DNA of 63,965 nt, filler included, from Octopus bimaculoides (Eukaryota): the NCBI RefSeq assembly GCF_001194135.2. It is 7 parts of 7 records of this genome, joined end to end, with 100 filler letters (N's around TTAATTAATTAA, not from the genome) between each part and the next. Parts side by side here need not be neighbours in the genome. Positions count along the whole stretch, not along the records: positions 1 to 15,918 come from NC_069000.1; 6 more parts are not named here. The stretch is one strand, 5' to 3'. The position numbers and the translations under genes are program-made. This document shows, one piece after another, positions 344 through 14,521 of this stretch (position 1 is its first letter; the number at the start of each line of letters is the position of its first letter). Under the pieces are notes generated by a model. That model saw only the letters and a program-made list of their open reading frames with translations, made no database searches and was not told where the DNA came from.

Positions 344-695
344 CTATGGATTTCCTATCCATTGTATAAATCCATCTGTTATCTTATCGTGCAAAGTTGC
401 GTTATAACCGCCAATATAATAAGCGATGAATTCCGATATCTTAGACGCCTTTATCGCATACATATTCAATAATGCCACCATTCTTTTATCCGCCAGAGCA
501 TTTGGACACGGAGTCAATCTAAATGGAATGTCGATGCAAGGACACTGAGTTGGATTGGTTGACTTACAATAACGTACTTGTATATCAATTTTAGTACATA
601 CTGGTGAAATGGATCCGAAATCGGACCATTCTCTTGAGATACAATGATATTCGCAAAAATCTATATCAGGTAAACTAGAGCAGTCAACTTCGATC
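344..695 (-). CDS. Terminal coding exon: end of the peroxidase domain, TSP1-like repeat and C-terminal tail
   Basis: Acceptor ttattctctttcaag|G in phase 2. Encodes SIEVDCSSLPDIDFCEYHCISREWSDFGSISPVCTKIDIQVRYC...WIGNP*. The upstream Met in the ORF track lies in the polypyrimidine tract. Confidence 0.85.
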
Positions 696-12974: not shown

Positions 12975-14521
12975 GAGAGAGAGAGAGGGGGAGAGAGGAG
13001 AGAGAGGGGGAGACAGATAGAGAAATATTGGTTTCTCAATGATAATTATCTACTAAAGAACATCTTACCTCCGGTTATTGGGTTTCCCGCTTTTAGAAAA
13101 AATGTTGTAGTCGGAGGGAACGTTCCTAAAATTCGAAACGAAAAGCAAGTATGAATGGTGAGTTAGACACAATTATTTCTGTCTTCAGCCATCCCTTATG
13201 ATGTTACTTCTGTATTGTGTATCTAGGTTAAGAACGTCTTGCGCTACAACTTCTCTTGAACATGGTAAAATTTCGAATCCGTAGTGCAATATTATGAATT
13301 ACCCATAAGTTATATAGCATTATTGCGGATTATAATAGTAAAAACTATATCCACATACAACCCGTGCACATGTACACTTAGAAAATATAGATGCATAGAT
13401 AAGTCGATAGACACATATACCCGTATGTTCAATGAAAAGTATTGCTCCTTACCGGGTGGTGTATTGCCTAGGTGATGAACTGGTGAATACAGAAAAGACA
13501 AGTCAATCACATGGGGTATTTTATTTTTGCCTTCCGTTTCTGAACCTGTTTAAAAGATAAAACAAGAATTAAAGTAAGAAACATTTAGACAACAGTAGAT
13601 ATCACAATTAAAAAACTATTTCTTAATTATGAATAGACTGTTCAAAATGTCAGTTACTTATAGAAATTTAAAATTAATGAATTATATGGTCAAATTCTGA
13701 TTTCTAAAAAAAATGACCTTGTTACTTCGAAGTTCAAAGTATTGCTTTCAATATATACAGGGACGTTTTTACAGCTGTTCGAGACATCTTTCCAGAAGAA
13801 CAGTAACTATCTCTTCGCTTATCTATGATAATTTTGAGTAATTTTTATCGTATTACTTCTCAGCTGACCCTATTACGAACAGTGAAGCTGAATTCCTTTC
13901 TTACAAGCGTCAGATTTTTTTCTGTAAAAAAAAAAAAAAAAAAAAGTCTGGTGGACGCATATCAAACTTTAACACTTTCGTATTCTTCTCTGAATACCTT
14001 TTAAAACGTTAAGTATGACTATACAAATATTTATAATTGGTTATCACTCTGTGAAAAATTGAAATTTTACATCATTCCACTTGTGTAAGATTTAATTGCT
14101 CACTCTTTTAATGTACAGGACATATATGTTTTGGAGTACTCTAGCCCTGTCTTTATGATTGTCTCTTTTATTAAAGACTAATAATATGAAGCTTTACAAA
14201 GTATTATAAGTGGAAGTATAGCTGACGCAATGTACACCATATATTGTATTTATTATATTGTTCTTTTAAAGATCAAATTTGAAAATCTCTATGGCAAACA
14301 TAGGATCTCAACACAGAACCGAAATAAATCCAAATACTGTATTAAATCCTCTTTCTTATTACATCTGAAACAATGTTATAAATAAAGAAAAAGAAACTTT
14401 TTACTTCTTACCTGTGCAGTTGATATCCTTTATTAGAGTTGGTTTGTTGTATTTTATACACGTACACGATGTATTACGTGGGTCATTGGCGATATTGCAA
14501 CTAATATCATAGCAGGAGGGA
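344..14521 (-). CDS. Spliced heme peroxidase-like protein, predicted catalytically dead, with a C-terminal TSP1-like repeat. 5'-partial: 8 exons, about 499 aa.
   Basis: Exons 14521-14412, 13545-13453, 13125-13069, 10399-9958, 9290-9105, 6190-6030, 3395-3296 and 695-344 all have AG/GT borders and matching phases (2,1,1,1,2,2,1,2), with no stop until TAG at 344. Peroxidase landmarks occur in order: CYDI..NDP..C, IDLSFLY, EHNRL, EARKLLIGIFQHITYNEYLPMLLG, GIPTY, DIGFLPGGFLE, GPTLTKLFEEQFKKLQEGDRLYYE, QLRQIRNMTMARLLC, DCSSLPDIDF. Confidence 0.9.
1120..1495 (-). mobile_element. Two adjacent copies of a tRNA-derived SINE with a Meta-domain-like core
   Basis: Reverse complement of the recurrent core ttctgagttcaaattccgccgaggtcgactttgcctttcatcctttcggggtcgataaattaagtaccagt, which recurs more than 10 times in the window. 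Confidence 0.8.
3296..3395 (-). CDS. Peroxidase-like exon YQLRQIRNMTMARLLCRNVNGLTEVKEKAFNCS
   Basis: Borders catttcag|AC...TC|gtgagt, 100 nt, phase 1 to 2. Matches the family motif QLxEIRKxxLARIIC. Not in the ORF track. Confidence 0.92.
3860..4070 (-). mobile_element. SINE copy (same family)
   Basis: Contains aaaggatgaaaggcaaagttaacctcg...tttgcccggcgtgctaacgatt. Confidence 0.75.
4160..4370 (-). mobile_element. Decayed non-LTR retrotransposon RT fragment (R4/Dong-like)
   Basis: Frameshifted translation RRI[F]QGDSLSSLLFVISMILVSQI matches the RT motif QGDxLSPLLF. Confidence 0.7.
4385..5050 (+). mobile_element. Three tandem head-to-tail SINE copies
   Basis: Three successive heads (ggcggggagctgtcag, atggtgagctgacagaatcg, ggccagctcgcagaatcgttagc), each ending in an attatt tail. 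Confidence 0.75.
6030..6190 (-). CDS. Peroxidase-like exon GNPYDIGFLPGGFLE...GPTL...QFKKLQEGDRLYYEHDGVFES
   Basis: Borders tattccag|G...T|gtaagt, 161 nt, phase 2 to 1. Matches DIDLxxGGxxE...GPT...QFxxLxxGDRFWYE. Confidence 0.95.
7478..7760 (-). mobile_element. Tc1-like transposon 3' fragment
   Basis: Translation ALAKEWTKIPLQTIQTLYESIPCRIQAAITTIGGPHPY* is a Tc1 C-terminus, followed by the TIR-like end TA|CAGGGGTTCGACAAAGTAATGG. Confidence 0.7.
7878..7985. repeat. (AAG)n microsatellite, representative of many others
   Basis: Seen directly and explains the poly-K/L/E ORFs. Other examples: (CA)n at 6826-6882, 18227-18312 and 53763-53838; (TTC)n at 44733-44840; (TAT)n at 49182-49254; (TATC)n at 57820-57871; (TA)n at most gap edges. 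Confidence 0.95.
8195..8598 (+). mobile_element. Internally deleted Tc1/mariner element
   Basis: TA-flanked TIRs CCATTTAAAAAG / CTTTTTAAATGG. Internal N-terminal HTH remnant QKKSFCVLEYTKTESWTCVQRK. Confidence 0.65.
9105..9290 (-). CDS. Peroxidase-like exon with a degenerate DLxALNIQRGRDHGLP motif (DIVAIASQDTQFWGIP)
   Basis: Borders cttttttcag|A...GG|gttagt, 186 nt, phase 2 to 2. Gives an ungapped 16-residue alignment to the motif and ends in LLDLYG. Confidence 0.88.
9678..9875 (+). mobile_element. SINE copy
   Basis: aaggcagcgaactggcagag...ctttcatcccttcggggtcaataaattaag. Confidence 0.75.
9958..10399 (-). CDS. Large peroxidase-like exon (AADPINKNP...DEHNRL...EARK...QHITYNEYLP...)
   Basis: Borders attttatag|CT...AA|gtaagt, 442 nt, phase 1 to 2. 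Confidence 0.95.
11233..11382 (+). mobile_element. Possible Merlin/IS1595-type transposase N-terminal remnant
   Basis: DAVNYLHEKGVIPKETRCSKSKHNISKKVVRGNLYWWYTRNGCNECLSV* resembles the zinc-ribbon region. Recognised by eye only. Confidence 0.3.
12127..12688. repeat. 562-bp fold-back palindrome (MITE-like)
   Basis: Arms 12127-12407 and 12418-12688 are reverse complements along their length, with a 10-nt loop gcagaaaaga. Confidence 0.9.
13069..13125 (-). CDS. Short exon GTFPPTTTFFLKAGNPITG
   Basis: Borders gaattttag|GA...G|gtaaga, 57 nt, phase 1 to 1, open frame. Bridges the DLS exon to the AAD exon. Confidence 0.75.
13453..13545 (-). CDS. Exon GSETEGKNKIPHVIDLSFLYSPVHHLGNTPP (calcium-loop region)
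   Basis: Borders cttttaaacag|GT...G|gtaagg, 93 nt, phase 1 to 1. NKIPHVIDLSFLY aligns with NxxTSFxDxSxxY. Confidence 0.85.
14412..14521 (-). CDS. Exon PSCYDISCNIANDPRNTSCTCIKYNKPTLIKDINCT
   Basis: Borders tattttgaag|T...G|gtaaga, 110 nt, phase 2 to 1. Matches the family pattern PxCxPIxIxxxDP...C. Confidence 0.85.

What the first reader, a model, noticed from the sequence alone, without database searches (positions are those of the whole stretch)
344..14521. Intact peroxidase-fold gene with its heme pocket dismantled: a candidate secreted pseudo-peroxidase
Seen: eight exons splice into one uninterrupted frame of about 499 aa. Established: myeloperoxidase (mature numbering) uses GDxRxxE (Arg239, Glu242), RYGH (Arg333, proximal His336) and LNxQRxRDHG (Asn421, Arg424). 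Aligned by eye, these read here as AADPINKNP (Arg lost, Glu to Lys), FTLAYTLAMASMM (Arg to Leu, His to Ala) and IASQDTQFWGIP (Asn to Ala, Arg to Asp). Structural motifs (EHNR, QHITYNEYLP, GGxxE, GPT, GDR, the Cys pattern) are kept. Inference: loss of every heme contact with the frame and splice sites preserved indicates a pseudoenzyme kept for a non-catalytic role such as matrix, adhesive, optical or ligand-binding function. Cephalopods are known to reuse enzyme folds structurally (S-crystallins from GST, omega-crystallin from ALDH), and active peroxidases are known from ink gland and squid light organ. I do not recall a characterised dead counterpart.
Basis: partly seen in the sequence, partly recalled or inferred. 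Interest (0 to 1): 0.88.

Follow-up and report, generated by a model that had tools for sequence, protein, structure and literature searches.

The report
Octopus heme-less peroxidase-like gene, fast evolving
This is most of an Octopus bimaculoides gene for a peroxidase-shaped protein that has lost the residues that hold and use heme. It belongs to an old, octopus-only, tandemly duplicated family of such "dead" peroxidases, whose reading frames are kept open while their sequences change unusually fast.

Summary
On the minus strand, eight GT..AG exons (14521..344) join into 499 codons plus a stop, and all three assembly gaps lie in introns. This matches RefSeq XP_014782521 of Octopus bimaculoides.

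The gene is longer than the window. Four more 5' exons, including a signal peptide, lie 8-12 kb upstream. One micro-exon junction falls in DNA I could not read.

Profile alignments confirm that the heme machinery is gone:
- distal His to Phe
- catalytic Arg to Pro
- Glu242 to Lys
- proximal His to Ala
- Asn421 to Ala
- Arg424 to Asp

The calcium-site Asp and Ser are kept, and the predicted fold still matches lactoperoxidase and myeloperoxidase (TM about 0.7).

The loss is shared by a cluster of at least six paralogs here, and by relatives in O. sinensis, O. vulgaris and Argonauta.

Against its true orthologs, dN/dS is about 0.9-1.25. However, there are no stops (P about 1e-4) and no frameshifts (P about 2e-5), and family-invariant sites change 4-5 times more slowly than variable ones.

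Best reading: a functional, secreted, non-catalytic binding scaffold evolving fast. Dead peroxidase domains are already known (DUOX PHD, PXDNL), so this is a new variant of a known kind. No evidence of expression could be found.

The parts
14412..14521 (-). Exon a (110 nt). It encodes PSCYDISCNIANDPRNTSCTCIKYNKPTLIKDINCT and starts with the last base of a split codon (phase-2 acceptor).
   Evidence: Exact match to P0017 residues 140-176. AG acceptor and GTAAGA donor. Homologous to exon 4 of the O. sinensis paralog, which has the same phase.
13453..13545 (-). Exon b (93 nt). It holds the calcium-site loop IPHVIDLS: Asp190 at 13504-13502 and Ser192 at 13498-13496 are kept, and Thr168 is replaced by Pro186 at 13516-13514.
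13069..13125 (-). Exon c (57 nt, GTFPPTTTFFLKAGNPITG). It has the same length and phases as the paralogs' GKFNLNSGFLPLTGTSFVG exon.
   Evidence: Splice-site and similarity scan. Exact match to P0017. Conserved at 79% in the O. vulgaris and O. sinensis orthologs.
9958..10399 (-). Exon d (442 nt), the core of the peroxidase domain. Pro229 (10391-10389) replaces the catalytic Arg. Lys232 (10382-10380) replaces Glu242. Asn233 replaces Met243. Leu320 (10118-10116) replaces Arg333. Ala323 (10109-10107) replaces the proximal His. EHNR and QHITYNEYLP are kept.
   Evidence: Pfam hit. Sequence. Alignments. Coordinates.
9105..9290 (-). Exon e (186 nt). IASQDTQFWGIP stands in place of LNxQRxRDHGxP. Ala392 (9235-9233) replaces Asn421 and Asp395 (9226-9224) replaces Arg424. 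Gln394 and Asp395 are invariant in the family.
6030..6190 (-). Exon f (161 nt). It holds GGFLE, GPT and EGDRLYYE.
   Evidence: Pfam hit of 38.7 bits..
3296..3395 (-). Exon g (100 nt, QLRQIRNMTMARLLCRNVNGLTEVKEKAFNCS).
344..695 (-). Exon h (352 nt including stop TAG at 346-344). It encodes the end of the peroxidase domain, a Cys-rich module that weakly resembles a thrombospondin type 1 repeat (about 491-695), and a helical tail.
   Evidence: The Cys pattern is conserved in the family. Homologous positions of the bivalve relatives P0066 and P0067 give sub-threshold TSP_1 hits of 18 and 15 bits. The module is modelled as strands followed by three helices, with pLDDT 84-95.
6235..6274 (.). Assembly gap inside intron e-f, 45 nt upstream of the exon f acceptor and flanked by TA/CA microsatellite.
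   Evidence: Junction e|f is contiguous in the alignments to orthologs and paralogs.
7840..7877 (.). Assembly gap inside intron e-f, next to a homopolymer run of about 110 nt.
12720..12882 (.). Assembly gap inside intron c-d. Exon c lies upstream of it and is not hidden in it.

Best explanation
The window holds the last eight exons (499 of about 633 codons) of an Octopus bimaculoides gene. The gene has about 13 exons and spans about 27 kb.

Shown:
- The product has the fold of an animal heme peroxidase, but the residues that bind heme and react with peroxide have been replaced. Distal His is Phe116 and Asp94 is Met115. Catalytic Arg is Pro229 and Glu242 is Lys232. Proximal His is Ala323 and its Asn partner is Ala392. 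Arg424 is Asp395.
- The Asp and Ser ligands of the structural calcium site and the scaffold motifs are kept.
- The gene is one of at least six tandem paralogs on the same chromosome. It belongs to a family found in Octopus and Argonauta.
- The new pocket residues are themselves conserved in that family (Ala323 nearly invariant, Gln394-Asp395 invariant).
- The pocket was therefore remodelled before these lineages split and has been kept since.

Inferred:
- The protein is secreted. This rests on a signal-peptide-like exon 1, eight N-glycosylation sequons and 24 Cys.
- It carries no heme and has no peroxidase activity.
- It works by binding something through the remodelled peroxidase scaffold and the Cys-rich C-terminal module.
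- This ortholog group changes its amino acids at about the neutral rate while strictly keeping its frame, and its exons have diverged more than its introns. The partner is therefore probably something that itself changes quickly. I favour an extracellular recognition or adhesion role at an immune, microbial or reproductive interface. That last step is a guess from the mode of evolution, not from any direct data.
For: Gene model and identity.

Family membership and fold:
- Pfam An_peroxidase, 192.8 bits.
- AF2 model with pLDDT 77, pTM 0.81.
- Foldseek to LPO and MPO with TM 0.70-0.73 and probability 1.0. The heme-less DUOX1 PHD is also among the hits.

Loss of catalytic residues:
- HMMER against MPO, MAFFT and hhalign family against canonical profiles at E 5.7e-74.
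- A canonical paralog in the same genome (C4:58.5 Mb) shows QFVDHD, GDHRANE, FRVGH and QRGRDHG by the same reading.

Family:
- Six cluster members share the dead motifs.
- Members occur in O. sinensis, O. vulgaris and Argonauta hians.
- The family clade has 100% support on a long stem, and Argonauta sequences nest in two sub-clades.

Frame maintenance:
- 242 differences over 1497 nt against O. vulgaris with no stop. Simulation expects 8.4 stops, and 0 stops occurred in 1e-4 of replicates.
- Introns carry about 7 frameshift-type indels per kb, while the coding sequence has none and only two in-frame indels. Poisson P = 2e-5.

Site heterogeneity: dN is 0.05 at family-invariant positions, 0.09 at highly conserved ones and 0.23 at variable ones.

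Fast evolution:
- omega is 0.88-1.25 by four methods, against 0.34 in the sister lineage P0003/L009.
- Exon p-distance is 0.162 against 0.120 in the introns, chi-square P = 7e-4.

Secretory features.
Against: - omega cannot be told apart from 1 (bootstrap 0.67-1.22). That is also what relaxed constraint gives.
- dS is low at the family-invariant sites too (1.5 synonymous changes in 65 codons). Part of the site heterogeneity could therefore be mutational, or come from gene conversion between paralogs. The latter could also inflate exon divergence.
- No transcript-derived protein of this gene was found in the 5.8-billion-sequence collection.
- Current RefSeq models of the gene and its orthologs are all partial or odd: 395 aa starting at an internal Met, 246 aa partial, and 244 aa that skips exon c.
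- The junction between exon 3 and exon a cannot be checked, because L001 positions 1-6528 read N.
- The gene has lost 11 of 65 residues that are invariant in the other family members.
- Exon h was not found within 5.4 kb downstream of exon g in O. vulgaris.
- Heme absence is inferred from sequence only. Tyr318 is conserved two positions after the family's Ala317, and one alignment places it opposite the proximal His.
- The proposed binding role has no direct evidence.
Confidence: 0.6

Rival explanations
1. The gene is under relaxed constraint, on its way to being a pseudogene or already untranslated. After tandem duplication this copy became redundant. Its protein sequence now drifts neutrally, and the frame has simply not been hit yet, or was under selection until recently.
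For: - omega is 0.88-1.25 against both orthologs, and 0.92 between O. vulgaris and O. sinensis.
- All three species' RefSeq models are truncated or aberrant, and the O. bimaculoides locus is now split into two genes.
- No transcript-derived sequences were found.
- 11 of 65 family-invariant residues are lost.
- Exon h was not found near exon g in O. vulgaris.
Against: - There is no stop in 499 aligned codons in two species despite 16% nucleotide divergence (P about 1e-4).
- There is no frameshift where 10.8 are expected from the intron indel rate (P = 2e-5).
- All 14 splice sites visible in the window are canonical.
- The micro-exon and exon c are conserved in O. vulgaris.
- dN is 4-5 times lower at family-invariant positions.
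- The same omega appears on all three branches. That would require parallel decay without a single disabling hit.
Confidence: 0.22
2. The protein still binds heme or another cofactor in a non-canonical way, for example through a Tyr ligand as in catalase or through other pocket residues. It would then keep some redox or ligand-carrier chemistry and would not be a pseudoenzyme.
For: - Tyr318 is conserved in nearly all family members (AY motif), and pairwise HMMER puts it opposite the proximal His.
- The pocket replacements are conserved rather than random: Ala323, Gln394 and Asp395.
- The O. vulgaris ortholog keeps a distal His. The basal O. sinensis paralog P0190 keeps the distal His, the GDDRINE motif and a His at the proximal column.
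- The fold is predicted to be preserved.
Against: - Profile-profile and multiple alignments put Ala, not Tyr, at the proximal column.
- In this gene the distal His, the catalytic Arg, both ester-forming acids, the Asn421 partner and Arg424 are all replaced, mostly by hydrophobic or oppositely charged residues.
- Human DUOX1 PHD has similar losses and shows no heme density (PMC7794343).
Confidence: 0.08
3. The eight exons are a 5'-truncated gene fragment. The upstream signal-peptide exons belong to a separate short gene, as current RefSeq has it. Only an N-terminally truncated, non-secreted 395-aa product, or none, would then be made.
For: - RefSeq now annotates LOC128250278 (139 aa, exons 1-3 reading into the intron) and a 395-aa protein starting at Met244.
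- The strong GTAAGT donor of exon 3 (phase 1) does not fit the phase-2 acceptor of exon a directly.
Against: - The same phase pair occurs in the O. sinensis paralog, where a 25-nt micro-exon bridges it.
- It also occurs in the O. vulgaris ortholog, where a 22-nt micro-exon (ADACCSS) lies 1.65 kb downstream of exon 3. The expected place in this genome falls in the stretch that reads N.
- Exons a-c stay open, in frame and conserved although they have no Met. That is not expected of a 5' UTR.
- A peroxidase domain cut at Met244 would lack its N-terminal third.
Confidence: 0.1

Closest known systems
Peroxidase homology domain (PHD) of human DUOX1/DUOX2
   Same: It has an animal-peroxidase fold in which the heme-ligand His and other heme-binding residues are missing. 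No heme is seen in the cryo-EM structure, while the cation-binding sites are kept and are needed for folding (PMC7794343). DUOX1 chains are among the Foldseek hits of the model. The octopus protein likewise keeps Asp117, Asp190 and Ser192 of the calcium site.
   Different: The DUOX PHD is the N-terminal ectodomain of a membrane NADPH oxidase and docks on it. The octopus protein is a stand-alone product with a predicted signal peptide and a Cys-rich C-terminal module. It is tandemly amplified and evolves at omega of about 1.
Peroxidasin-like protein PXDNL (human)
   Same: It is a secreted member of the peroxidase-cyclooxygenase superfamily that is enzymatically inactive because of changes at catalytic positions. 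[quoted passage not shown]
   Different: PXDNL keeps the LRR, Ig and vWC domain set of peroxidasin and is a single recent paralog. The octopod family has none of those domains (Pfam finds only An_peroxidase). It is old (Octopus plus Argonauta) and multi-copy.
Canonical molluscan 'chorion peroxidase-like' enzymes with a C-terminal TSR-like module (for example Sinanodonta woodiana KAL3886204, P0066)
   Same: They are the nearest active-looking relatives. The architecture is the same, a peroxidase domain followed by a Cys/Trp-rich module. They sit just outside the clade that leads through the transcripts P0055 and P0059 to the octopod family.
   Different: P0066 has the distal His, the GDxRxN motif, FRFGH and QRGRDHG, and scores 606 bits on An_peroxidase against 193 here.
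Euprymna scolopes light-organ halide peroxidase cluster
   Same: It is a cephalopod lineage-specific tandem expansion of heme-peroxidase genes. [quoted passage not shown]
   Different: Those genes are described as active halide peroxidases expressed in the light organ. Loss of the catalytic residues in the octopus cluster is not mentioned in the passages I read.
Peroxinectin (arthropod cell-adhesion peroxidase; recalled from my own knowledge)
   Same: It is a precedent for a secreted peroxidase-fold protein whose main role is binding or adhesion in immunity.
   Different: Peroxinectin keeps its heme and activity and has a KGD or RGD integrin motif. No RGD, KGD or LDV motif is present here.

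Membership tests
Animal heme peroxidase (Pfam PF03098, peroxidase-cyclooxygenase superfamily), by homology | Significant match to the family profile over the whole domain | tested here: met
   192.8 bits, E 1.2e-56, against a cut-off of 25. HMMER to MPO and LPO chains gives E about 1e-25. hhalign to canonical peroxidases gives E 5.7e-74.
Animal heme peroxidase, by homology | Mainly helical peroxidase fold | tested here: met
   The AF2 model (pTM 0.81) matches LPO and MPO with target-normalised TM 0.70-0.73 and probability 1.0. This is a prediction only.
Animal heme peroxidase, as an active enzyme | Distal His-Arg pair, with the Gln | tested here: not met
   His95 is Phe116 (exon 3, outside the window) and Arg239 is Pro229. 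Gln91 is kept as Gln112.
Animal heme peroxidase, as an active enzyme | Proximal His ligand hydrogen-bonded to Asn421 | tested here: not met
   His336 is Ala323, or Tyr318 in one pairwise alignment. Asn421 is Ala392. No His falls at the column in any alignment.
Animal heme peroxidase, as an active enzyme | Covalent heme links (Asp94 and Glu242 esters) and heme-propionate contacts (Arg333, Arg424) | tested here: not met
   The four positions read Met115, Lys232, Leu320 and Asp395.
Animal heme peroxidase, as an active enzyme | Structural calcium site (Asp96, Thr168, Phe170 carbonyl, Asp172, Ser174) | tested here: inconclusive
   Asp117, Asp190 and Ser192 are kept, and Thr168 is Pro186. Binding itself was not tested.
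Animal heme peroxidase, as an active enzyme | Heme content and peroxidase activity | not testable with these tools
   This needs recombinant or native protein.
Heme-less pseudo-peroxidase domains (DUOX1/2 PHD, PXDNL) | Peroxidase fold kept, heme ligand and catalytic residues lost, gene maintained | tested here: met
   Fold. Residues. Frame kept open in three species. Family shared with Argonauta. Precedents in PMC7794343 and PMC8533639.
Heme-less pseudo-peroxidase domains (DUOX1/2 PHD, PXDNL) | Their domain context (a NOX module, or LRR/Ig/vWC) | tested here: not met
   Pfam finds only An_peroxidase. The C-terminal module is at best TSR-like. The gene works like these proteins but is not an ortholog of either.
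Peroxinectin-type adhesion peroxidases | Integrin-binding RGD or KGD motif together with an active heme site | tested here: not met
   No RGD, KGD, LDV or NGR motif, and the heme site is lost.
Unitary or decaying pseudogene | Disabling mutations (stops, frameshifts, lost splice sites) | tested here: not met
   None in the 499 codons or at the 14 splice sites in the window. None in the O. vulgaris or O. sinensis orthologs.
Unitary or decaying pseudogene | dN/dS of about 1, uniform across sites | tested here: inconclusive
   Mean omega is 0.88-1.25. However, dN is 0.05 at family-invariant sites against 0.23 at variable ones. dS also differs between the classes, so this is not clean.

The most novel reading that the evidence does not exclude
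Octopods carry a lineage-specific, tandemly amplified family of secreted peroxidase scaffolds. The heme pocket was rebuilt into a conserved non-heme site before the Octopus-Argonauta split. Some members, including this one, are under diversifying selation-like pressure: exons diverge faster than introns and omega is at least 1 at variable sites. That would make them a recognition-molecule family, immune or reproductive, built on a dead enzyme fold.
Probability: 0.4. Interest if true: 0.65.

Novelty: new variant of a known kind. Interest (0 to 1): 0.5.

Why it matters
Dead enzymes reused as binding proteins are a recurring route to new functions. For animal heme peroxidases, the described cases are single domains or single paralogs (DUOX PHD, PXDNL).

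Here a whole family looks to have taken that route in one animal order. The series of forms is still visible:
- canonical bivalve relatives
- partly degenerate cephalopod transcripts
- a basal octopod paralog that keeps both His
- the fully stripped crown group

This makes the order of loss, and what replaced heme, directly testable.

There is also a practical point. These genes are named 'myeloperoxidase', 'chorion peroxidase-like' and 'peroxidase mlt-7-like' in RefSeq. They would be counted as oxidative-defence enzymes in cephalopod transcriptome and proteome studies, although they almost certainly cannot act as peroxidases.

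Tried and rejected
1. Exon c at 11666-11541 (GKIILETDEDPFPLVF). No donor/acceptor pair has the needed phases, and it abuts a SINE-like repeat. The real exon c is at 13125-13069.
2. An exon-3-like ORF at 15108-14917 (tblastn E 0.65). It has no DNA similarity to the true exon 3 and its phases do not fit. 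It is chance.
3. The segment GKCYKVTSFLFVI of the older RefSeq model (read-through of exon 3 to a GTGAGT donor). The same read-through hits a stop in O. vulgaris, which instead has a micro-exon. The segment also models at pLDDT below 50. It is probably an artefact.
4. A micro-exon search in the readable DNA between exon 3 and exon a. The only candidate lies in a microsatellite. The expected place reads N.
5. Tyr318 as the proximal-His equivalent (HMMER pairwise). MAFFT and hhalign overrule it, but I keep it as a rival.
6. TSP_1 as the identity of the C-terminal module. It is not detected in this protein even at E of 10 or less, and only at sub-threshold level in bivalve relatives.
7. A link to the Octopus maya oviducal-gland 'chorion peroxidase' that peaks at fertilisation (PMC8976471). 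Its qPCR primer maps to a canonical gene at C9:85.69 Mb, not to this cluster.
8. The octopus ink proteome paper. Nothing in it could be assigned to this family.
9. Literature searches by accession numbers and for 'pseudoperoxidase'. Nothing relevant was found.
10. Searches for transcript-derived proteins of this gene. None were found. The look-up of P0022 DNA also failed.
11. Integrin motifs. None are present.

Full report
WHAT IS IN THE WINDOW

The window is Octopus bimaculoides chromosome contig C20, 41,028,729-41,044,702. The gene lies on the minus strand.

I used the annotated proteins found, and the earlier RefSeq version recovered from its cluster (P0017 = XP_014782521.1, 638 aa). With these I mapped every residue back to the DNA and read the splice sites. 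Eight exons lie in the window:

| Exon | Coordinates (minus strand) |
|---|---|
| a | 14521-14412 |
| b | 13545-13453 |
| c | 13125-13069 |
| d | 10399-9958 |
| e | 9290-9105 |
| f | 6190-6030 |
| g | 3395-3296 |
| h | 695-344 |

All are flanked by AG and GT. Together they give 1501 nt, which is 499 codons plus TAG.

The three assembly gaps lie in introns: 6235-6274 and 7840-7877 in intron e-f, and 12720-12882 in intron c-d. The junctions c|d and e|f are contiguous when compared with paralog proteins and with the orthologous loci of O. vulgaris and O. sinensis. Nothing coding therefore needs to be hidden in the gaps.

THE GENE IS LONGER THAN THE WINDOW

Upstream, in window numbering continued into loci L001 and L004, lie four more exons:
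- exon 1 at 27636-27591 (MFFALLLTTLAVFLQ, signal-peptide-like)
- a 16-nt micro-exon at about 25498-25483
- exon 2 at 24407-24268
- exon 3 at 22902-22726

Exon 3 ends in a consensus donor (ACAG|GTAAGT, phase 1), whereas exon a has a phase-2 acceptor. They cannot join directly.

The O. sinensis paralog P0002 has the same phase pair, bridged by a 25-nt micro-exon encoding PESCCSGAS. The O. vulgaris ortholog has a 22-nt micro-exon (ADACCSS) 1.65 kb downstream of its exon 3. The corresponding place in this genome falls in 6.5 kb that read N for me, so I could not check it.

The older RefSeq model avoided the problem by reading exon 3 through to a downstream GTGAGT donor. In O. vulgaris that read-through hits a stop, and the segment models at pLDDT below 50. 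I take it as an artefact.

Current RefSeq splits the locus into LOC128250278 (139 aa) and a 395-aa 'myeloperoxidase' that starts at the first Met of exon d. This is an open point about how intact the gene is.

THE HEME SITE

The protein matches Pfam An_peroxidase at 192.8 bits, and MPO and LPO chains at E of about 1e-25.

Three alignments were compared:
- pairwise HMMER against MPO
- a 21-sequence MAFFT alignment with canonical mollusc and arthropod enzymes
- an hhalign comparison of a 10-member family profile with a 12-member canonical profile (E 5.7e-74)

They give the following assignments:

| Canonical motif | Reads here | Changes |
|---|---|---|
| Distal GQxxDHD | GQLLMFDMF | Gln kept; Asp94 to Met115; His95 to Phe116; Asp96 kept |
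| GDxRxxE(M)P | AADPINKNP | Arg239 to Pro229; Glu242 to Lys232; Met243 to Asn233 |
| AFRxGHS | LAYTLAMAS | Arg333 to Leu320; His336 to Ala323 |
| NxQRxRDHG | IASQDTQFWG | Asn421 to Ala392; Arg424 to Asp395 |

Only the pairwise HMMER alignment differs. It opens a 4-residue gap and puts Tyr318 opposite the proximal His. No alignment offers a His at that column.

The calcium-site ligands Asp117, Asp190 and Ser192 are kept. As a control, a canonical paralog of the same genome (C4:58.5 Mb) reads QFVDHD, GDHRANE, FRVGH and QRGRDHG.

An AlphaFold2 model (pLDDT 77, pTM 0.81) matches lactoperoxidase and myeloperoxidase with TM 0.70-0.73. The fold is therefore predicted to survive. The heme-less DUOX1 ectodomain is also among the hits.

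IT IS A FAMILY TRAIT

The An_peroxidase profile finds at least six weakly scoring copies within 41.0 +/- 0.1 Mb of C20. All of them carry the same replacements.

Database searches with the family profile find members only in O. bimaculoides, O. sinensis, O. vulgaris and Argonauta hians (281 bits or more). There is then a gap down to ordinary mollusc and arthropod peroxidases at 147 bits or less in the named collection. In the unnamed 1.8-billion-protein library, an intermediate tier appears.

A tree puts the octopod family on a long, fully supported stem. Argonauta sequences sit inside both of its sub-clades, so the duplications and the dead pocket predate the Octopus-Argonauta split.

Outside the family sit two transcript-derived proteins of unknown species:
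- P0055 keeps the distal His, the Arg and RDHG, but lacks FRxGH.
- P0059 is further degraded.

Next come canonical bivalve enzymes such as Sinanodonta P0066. These share a C-terminal Cys/Trp-rich module that scores just under threshold for a thrombospondin type 1 repeat.

Within the family, the basal O. sinensis paralog P0190 still has the distal His, GDDRINE and a His at the proximal column. The O. vulgaris ortholog of this gene has a distal His. The dismantling was therefore stepwise.

The replacement residues are conserved in the family: Ala323 is nearly invariant and Gln394-Asp395 are invariant. That argues for a remodelled and then maintained pocket, not for free drift.

SELECTION ON THIS GENE

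The true orthologs are O. vulgaris locus L011 and O. sinensis contig L012. The evidence for orthology is 100% tree support, alignable introns and shared ALSRVLMDEHNRL.

Rates:
- Over 499 aligned codons against O. vulgaris, dN = 0.177 and dS = 0.20, so omega = 0.88 by NG86 (bootstrap 0.67-1.22). Other methods give 0.97-1.11.
- Against O. sinensis, omega is 0.94-1.30.
- Between the two other species, omega is 0.92.
- The sister lineage P0003/L009 gives omega 0.34 at dS 0.094.

Three results speak against that:
1. Placing the observed 242 differences at random on the coding sequence gives 8.4 stops on average. No stop occurred in only 1e-4 of 20,000 trials.
2. Three orthologous introns carry 18 indels in 1.8 kb, 13 of them not multiples of three. 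The coding sequence has two indels, both of 3 nt. About 10.8 frameshifts are expected and none is observed, P = 2e-5.
3. dN is 0.05 at positions invariant in the other family members, 0.09 at highly conserved positions and 0.23 at variable ones.

In addition, the exons (p = 0.162) have diverged more than the introns (p = 0.120; chi-square P = 7e-4).

Caveats:
- dS is also low in the invariant class.
- Intron alignments may understate divergence.
- Gene conversion among paralogs could mimic part of this pattern.

I conclude that the frame is under selection, and that the amino-acid sequence is either weakly constrained or, more likely, partly driven to change.

WHAT IT PROBABLY DOES

Shown:
- a peroxidase-fold protein without the canonical heme ligands
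- the calcium-site Asp and Ser kept
- 24 Cys, eight N-glycosylation sequons and a hydrophobic N-terminus
- a Cys-rich C-terminal module and a helical tail
- tandem amplification, old age and fast evolution with the frame preserved

Inferred: a secreted, heme-free binding protein. The mode of evolution is the one usually seen in proteins that face a changing partner, in immunity, microbial contact, gamete or egg-coat recognition, or venom. I favour a recognition or adhesion role but have no direct evidence for it.

No integrin motif is present. The Octopus maya oviducal-gland 'chorion peroxidase' maps to a different, canonical gene on C9. No paper cites these accessions. No transcript-derived copy was found in the protein collection.

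COMPARISON WITH WHAT IS KNOWN

Heme-less peroxidase domains are established:
- The human DUOX1 peroxidase homology domain lacks the heme-ligand His, shows no heme density and keeps cation sites needed for folding (PMC7794343).
- PXDNL is inactive through changes at catalytic positions and is presumed to act otherwise (PMC8533639).

What is different here is a stand-alone secreted form, a TSR-like tail, amplification into a lineage-specific family and omega of about 1. Cephalopod peroxidase clusters have been noted before (PMC6386654), but in the passages I read the octopus copies are not described as catalytically dead.

I class it as a new variant of a known kind, of moderate interest.

VERDICT

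- Best explanation: a functional, secreted, non-catalytic scaffold evolving fast, at about 0.6.
- Rivals: relaxed or decaying gene at about 0.2; 5'-truncated fragment at about 0.1; non-canonical cofactor binding at about 0.08.

Noticed in passing
window 1102-1306, 1370-1473, 3845-4069, 4472-4583, 4619-4797, 4819-5047, 9679-9831, 11656-11768: At least eight copies, on both strands, of a dispersed SINE-like element of 100-200 nt, 69-86% identical to each other. All lie in introns. Their translation (…VDFAFHPFGVDK…) recurs in the ORF list.
   Followed up: partly
window 6437-6940, 7700-7990, 12883-13040, 14740-14860: Long CA/TA microsatellites, a homopolymer run of about 110 nt and GA-rich low-complexity DNA border each assembly gap. 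The gaps look like ordinary repeat-induced breaks.
   Followed up: no
G000:C20:41044647-41051174 (L001 positions 1-6528), directly upstream of the window: 6.5 kb read as N. This is where the micro-exon between exon 3 and exon a is expected. Further N blocks occur in L001, L002, L005, L007 and L010.
   Followed up: partly
RefSeq models of this locus (P0001, P0016, P0017): XP_014782521 shrank from 638 aa (version 1) to 395 aa (version 2). The first three exons became a separate 139-aa 'uncharacterized protein LOC128250278' that reads into the intron.
   Followed up: yes
O. vulgaris protein P0018 (875 aa) and P0025 (244 aa); locus L011: P0018 fuses parts of two neighbouring paralogs into one model. 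P0025, the ortholog of this gene, has a foreign N-terminus, skips the conserved exon c and stops inside exon e. Annotation of this cluster is unreliable in all three species.
   Followed up: partly
L011 17244-17471 (exon 3 of the O. vulgaris ortholog): The ortholog reads GQLLMHDMF. It has a His at the distal position where O. bimaculoides has Phe (two nucleotide changes). All other heme contacts are lost in both species.
   Followed up: partly
G000:C20:7590994-7591482 (L016) and C20:15480905-15481381 (L015): Other peroxidase-like genes on the same chromosome are partly degenerate. L016 keeps GDDRLNE but reads AAGLYSTSM, with Thr for the proximal His. L015 reads GIIYSHS, with Arg333 lost and the His kept. 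Loss of heme-site residues is not confined to the 41-Mb cluster.
   Followed up: partly
window exons compared with introns a-b, b-c and d-e, and their counterparts in L011/L012: Exons are more diverged between species than the neighbouring introns (p = 0.162 against 0.120). Intron b-c is only 7% diverged and has no indel in 326 nt.
   Followed up: partly
Proteins P0055 and P0059 (Logan transcript contigs of 2.2-2.6 kb, species unknown): These are complete ORFs with a signal peptide, a peroxidase domain with a partly lost heme site, and the same C-terminal Cys/Trp module. They branch just below the octopod family. Several near-identical contigs exist, so they are expressed somewhere.
   Followed up: partly
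G000:C9:85694559-85694578: The reverse qPCR primer of the Octopus maya oviducal-gland 'chorion peroxidase' (PMC8976471) matches here with one mismatch. The site is inside a canonical peroxidase gene at C9:85.69-85.71 Mb.
   Followed up: yes
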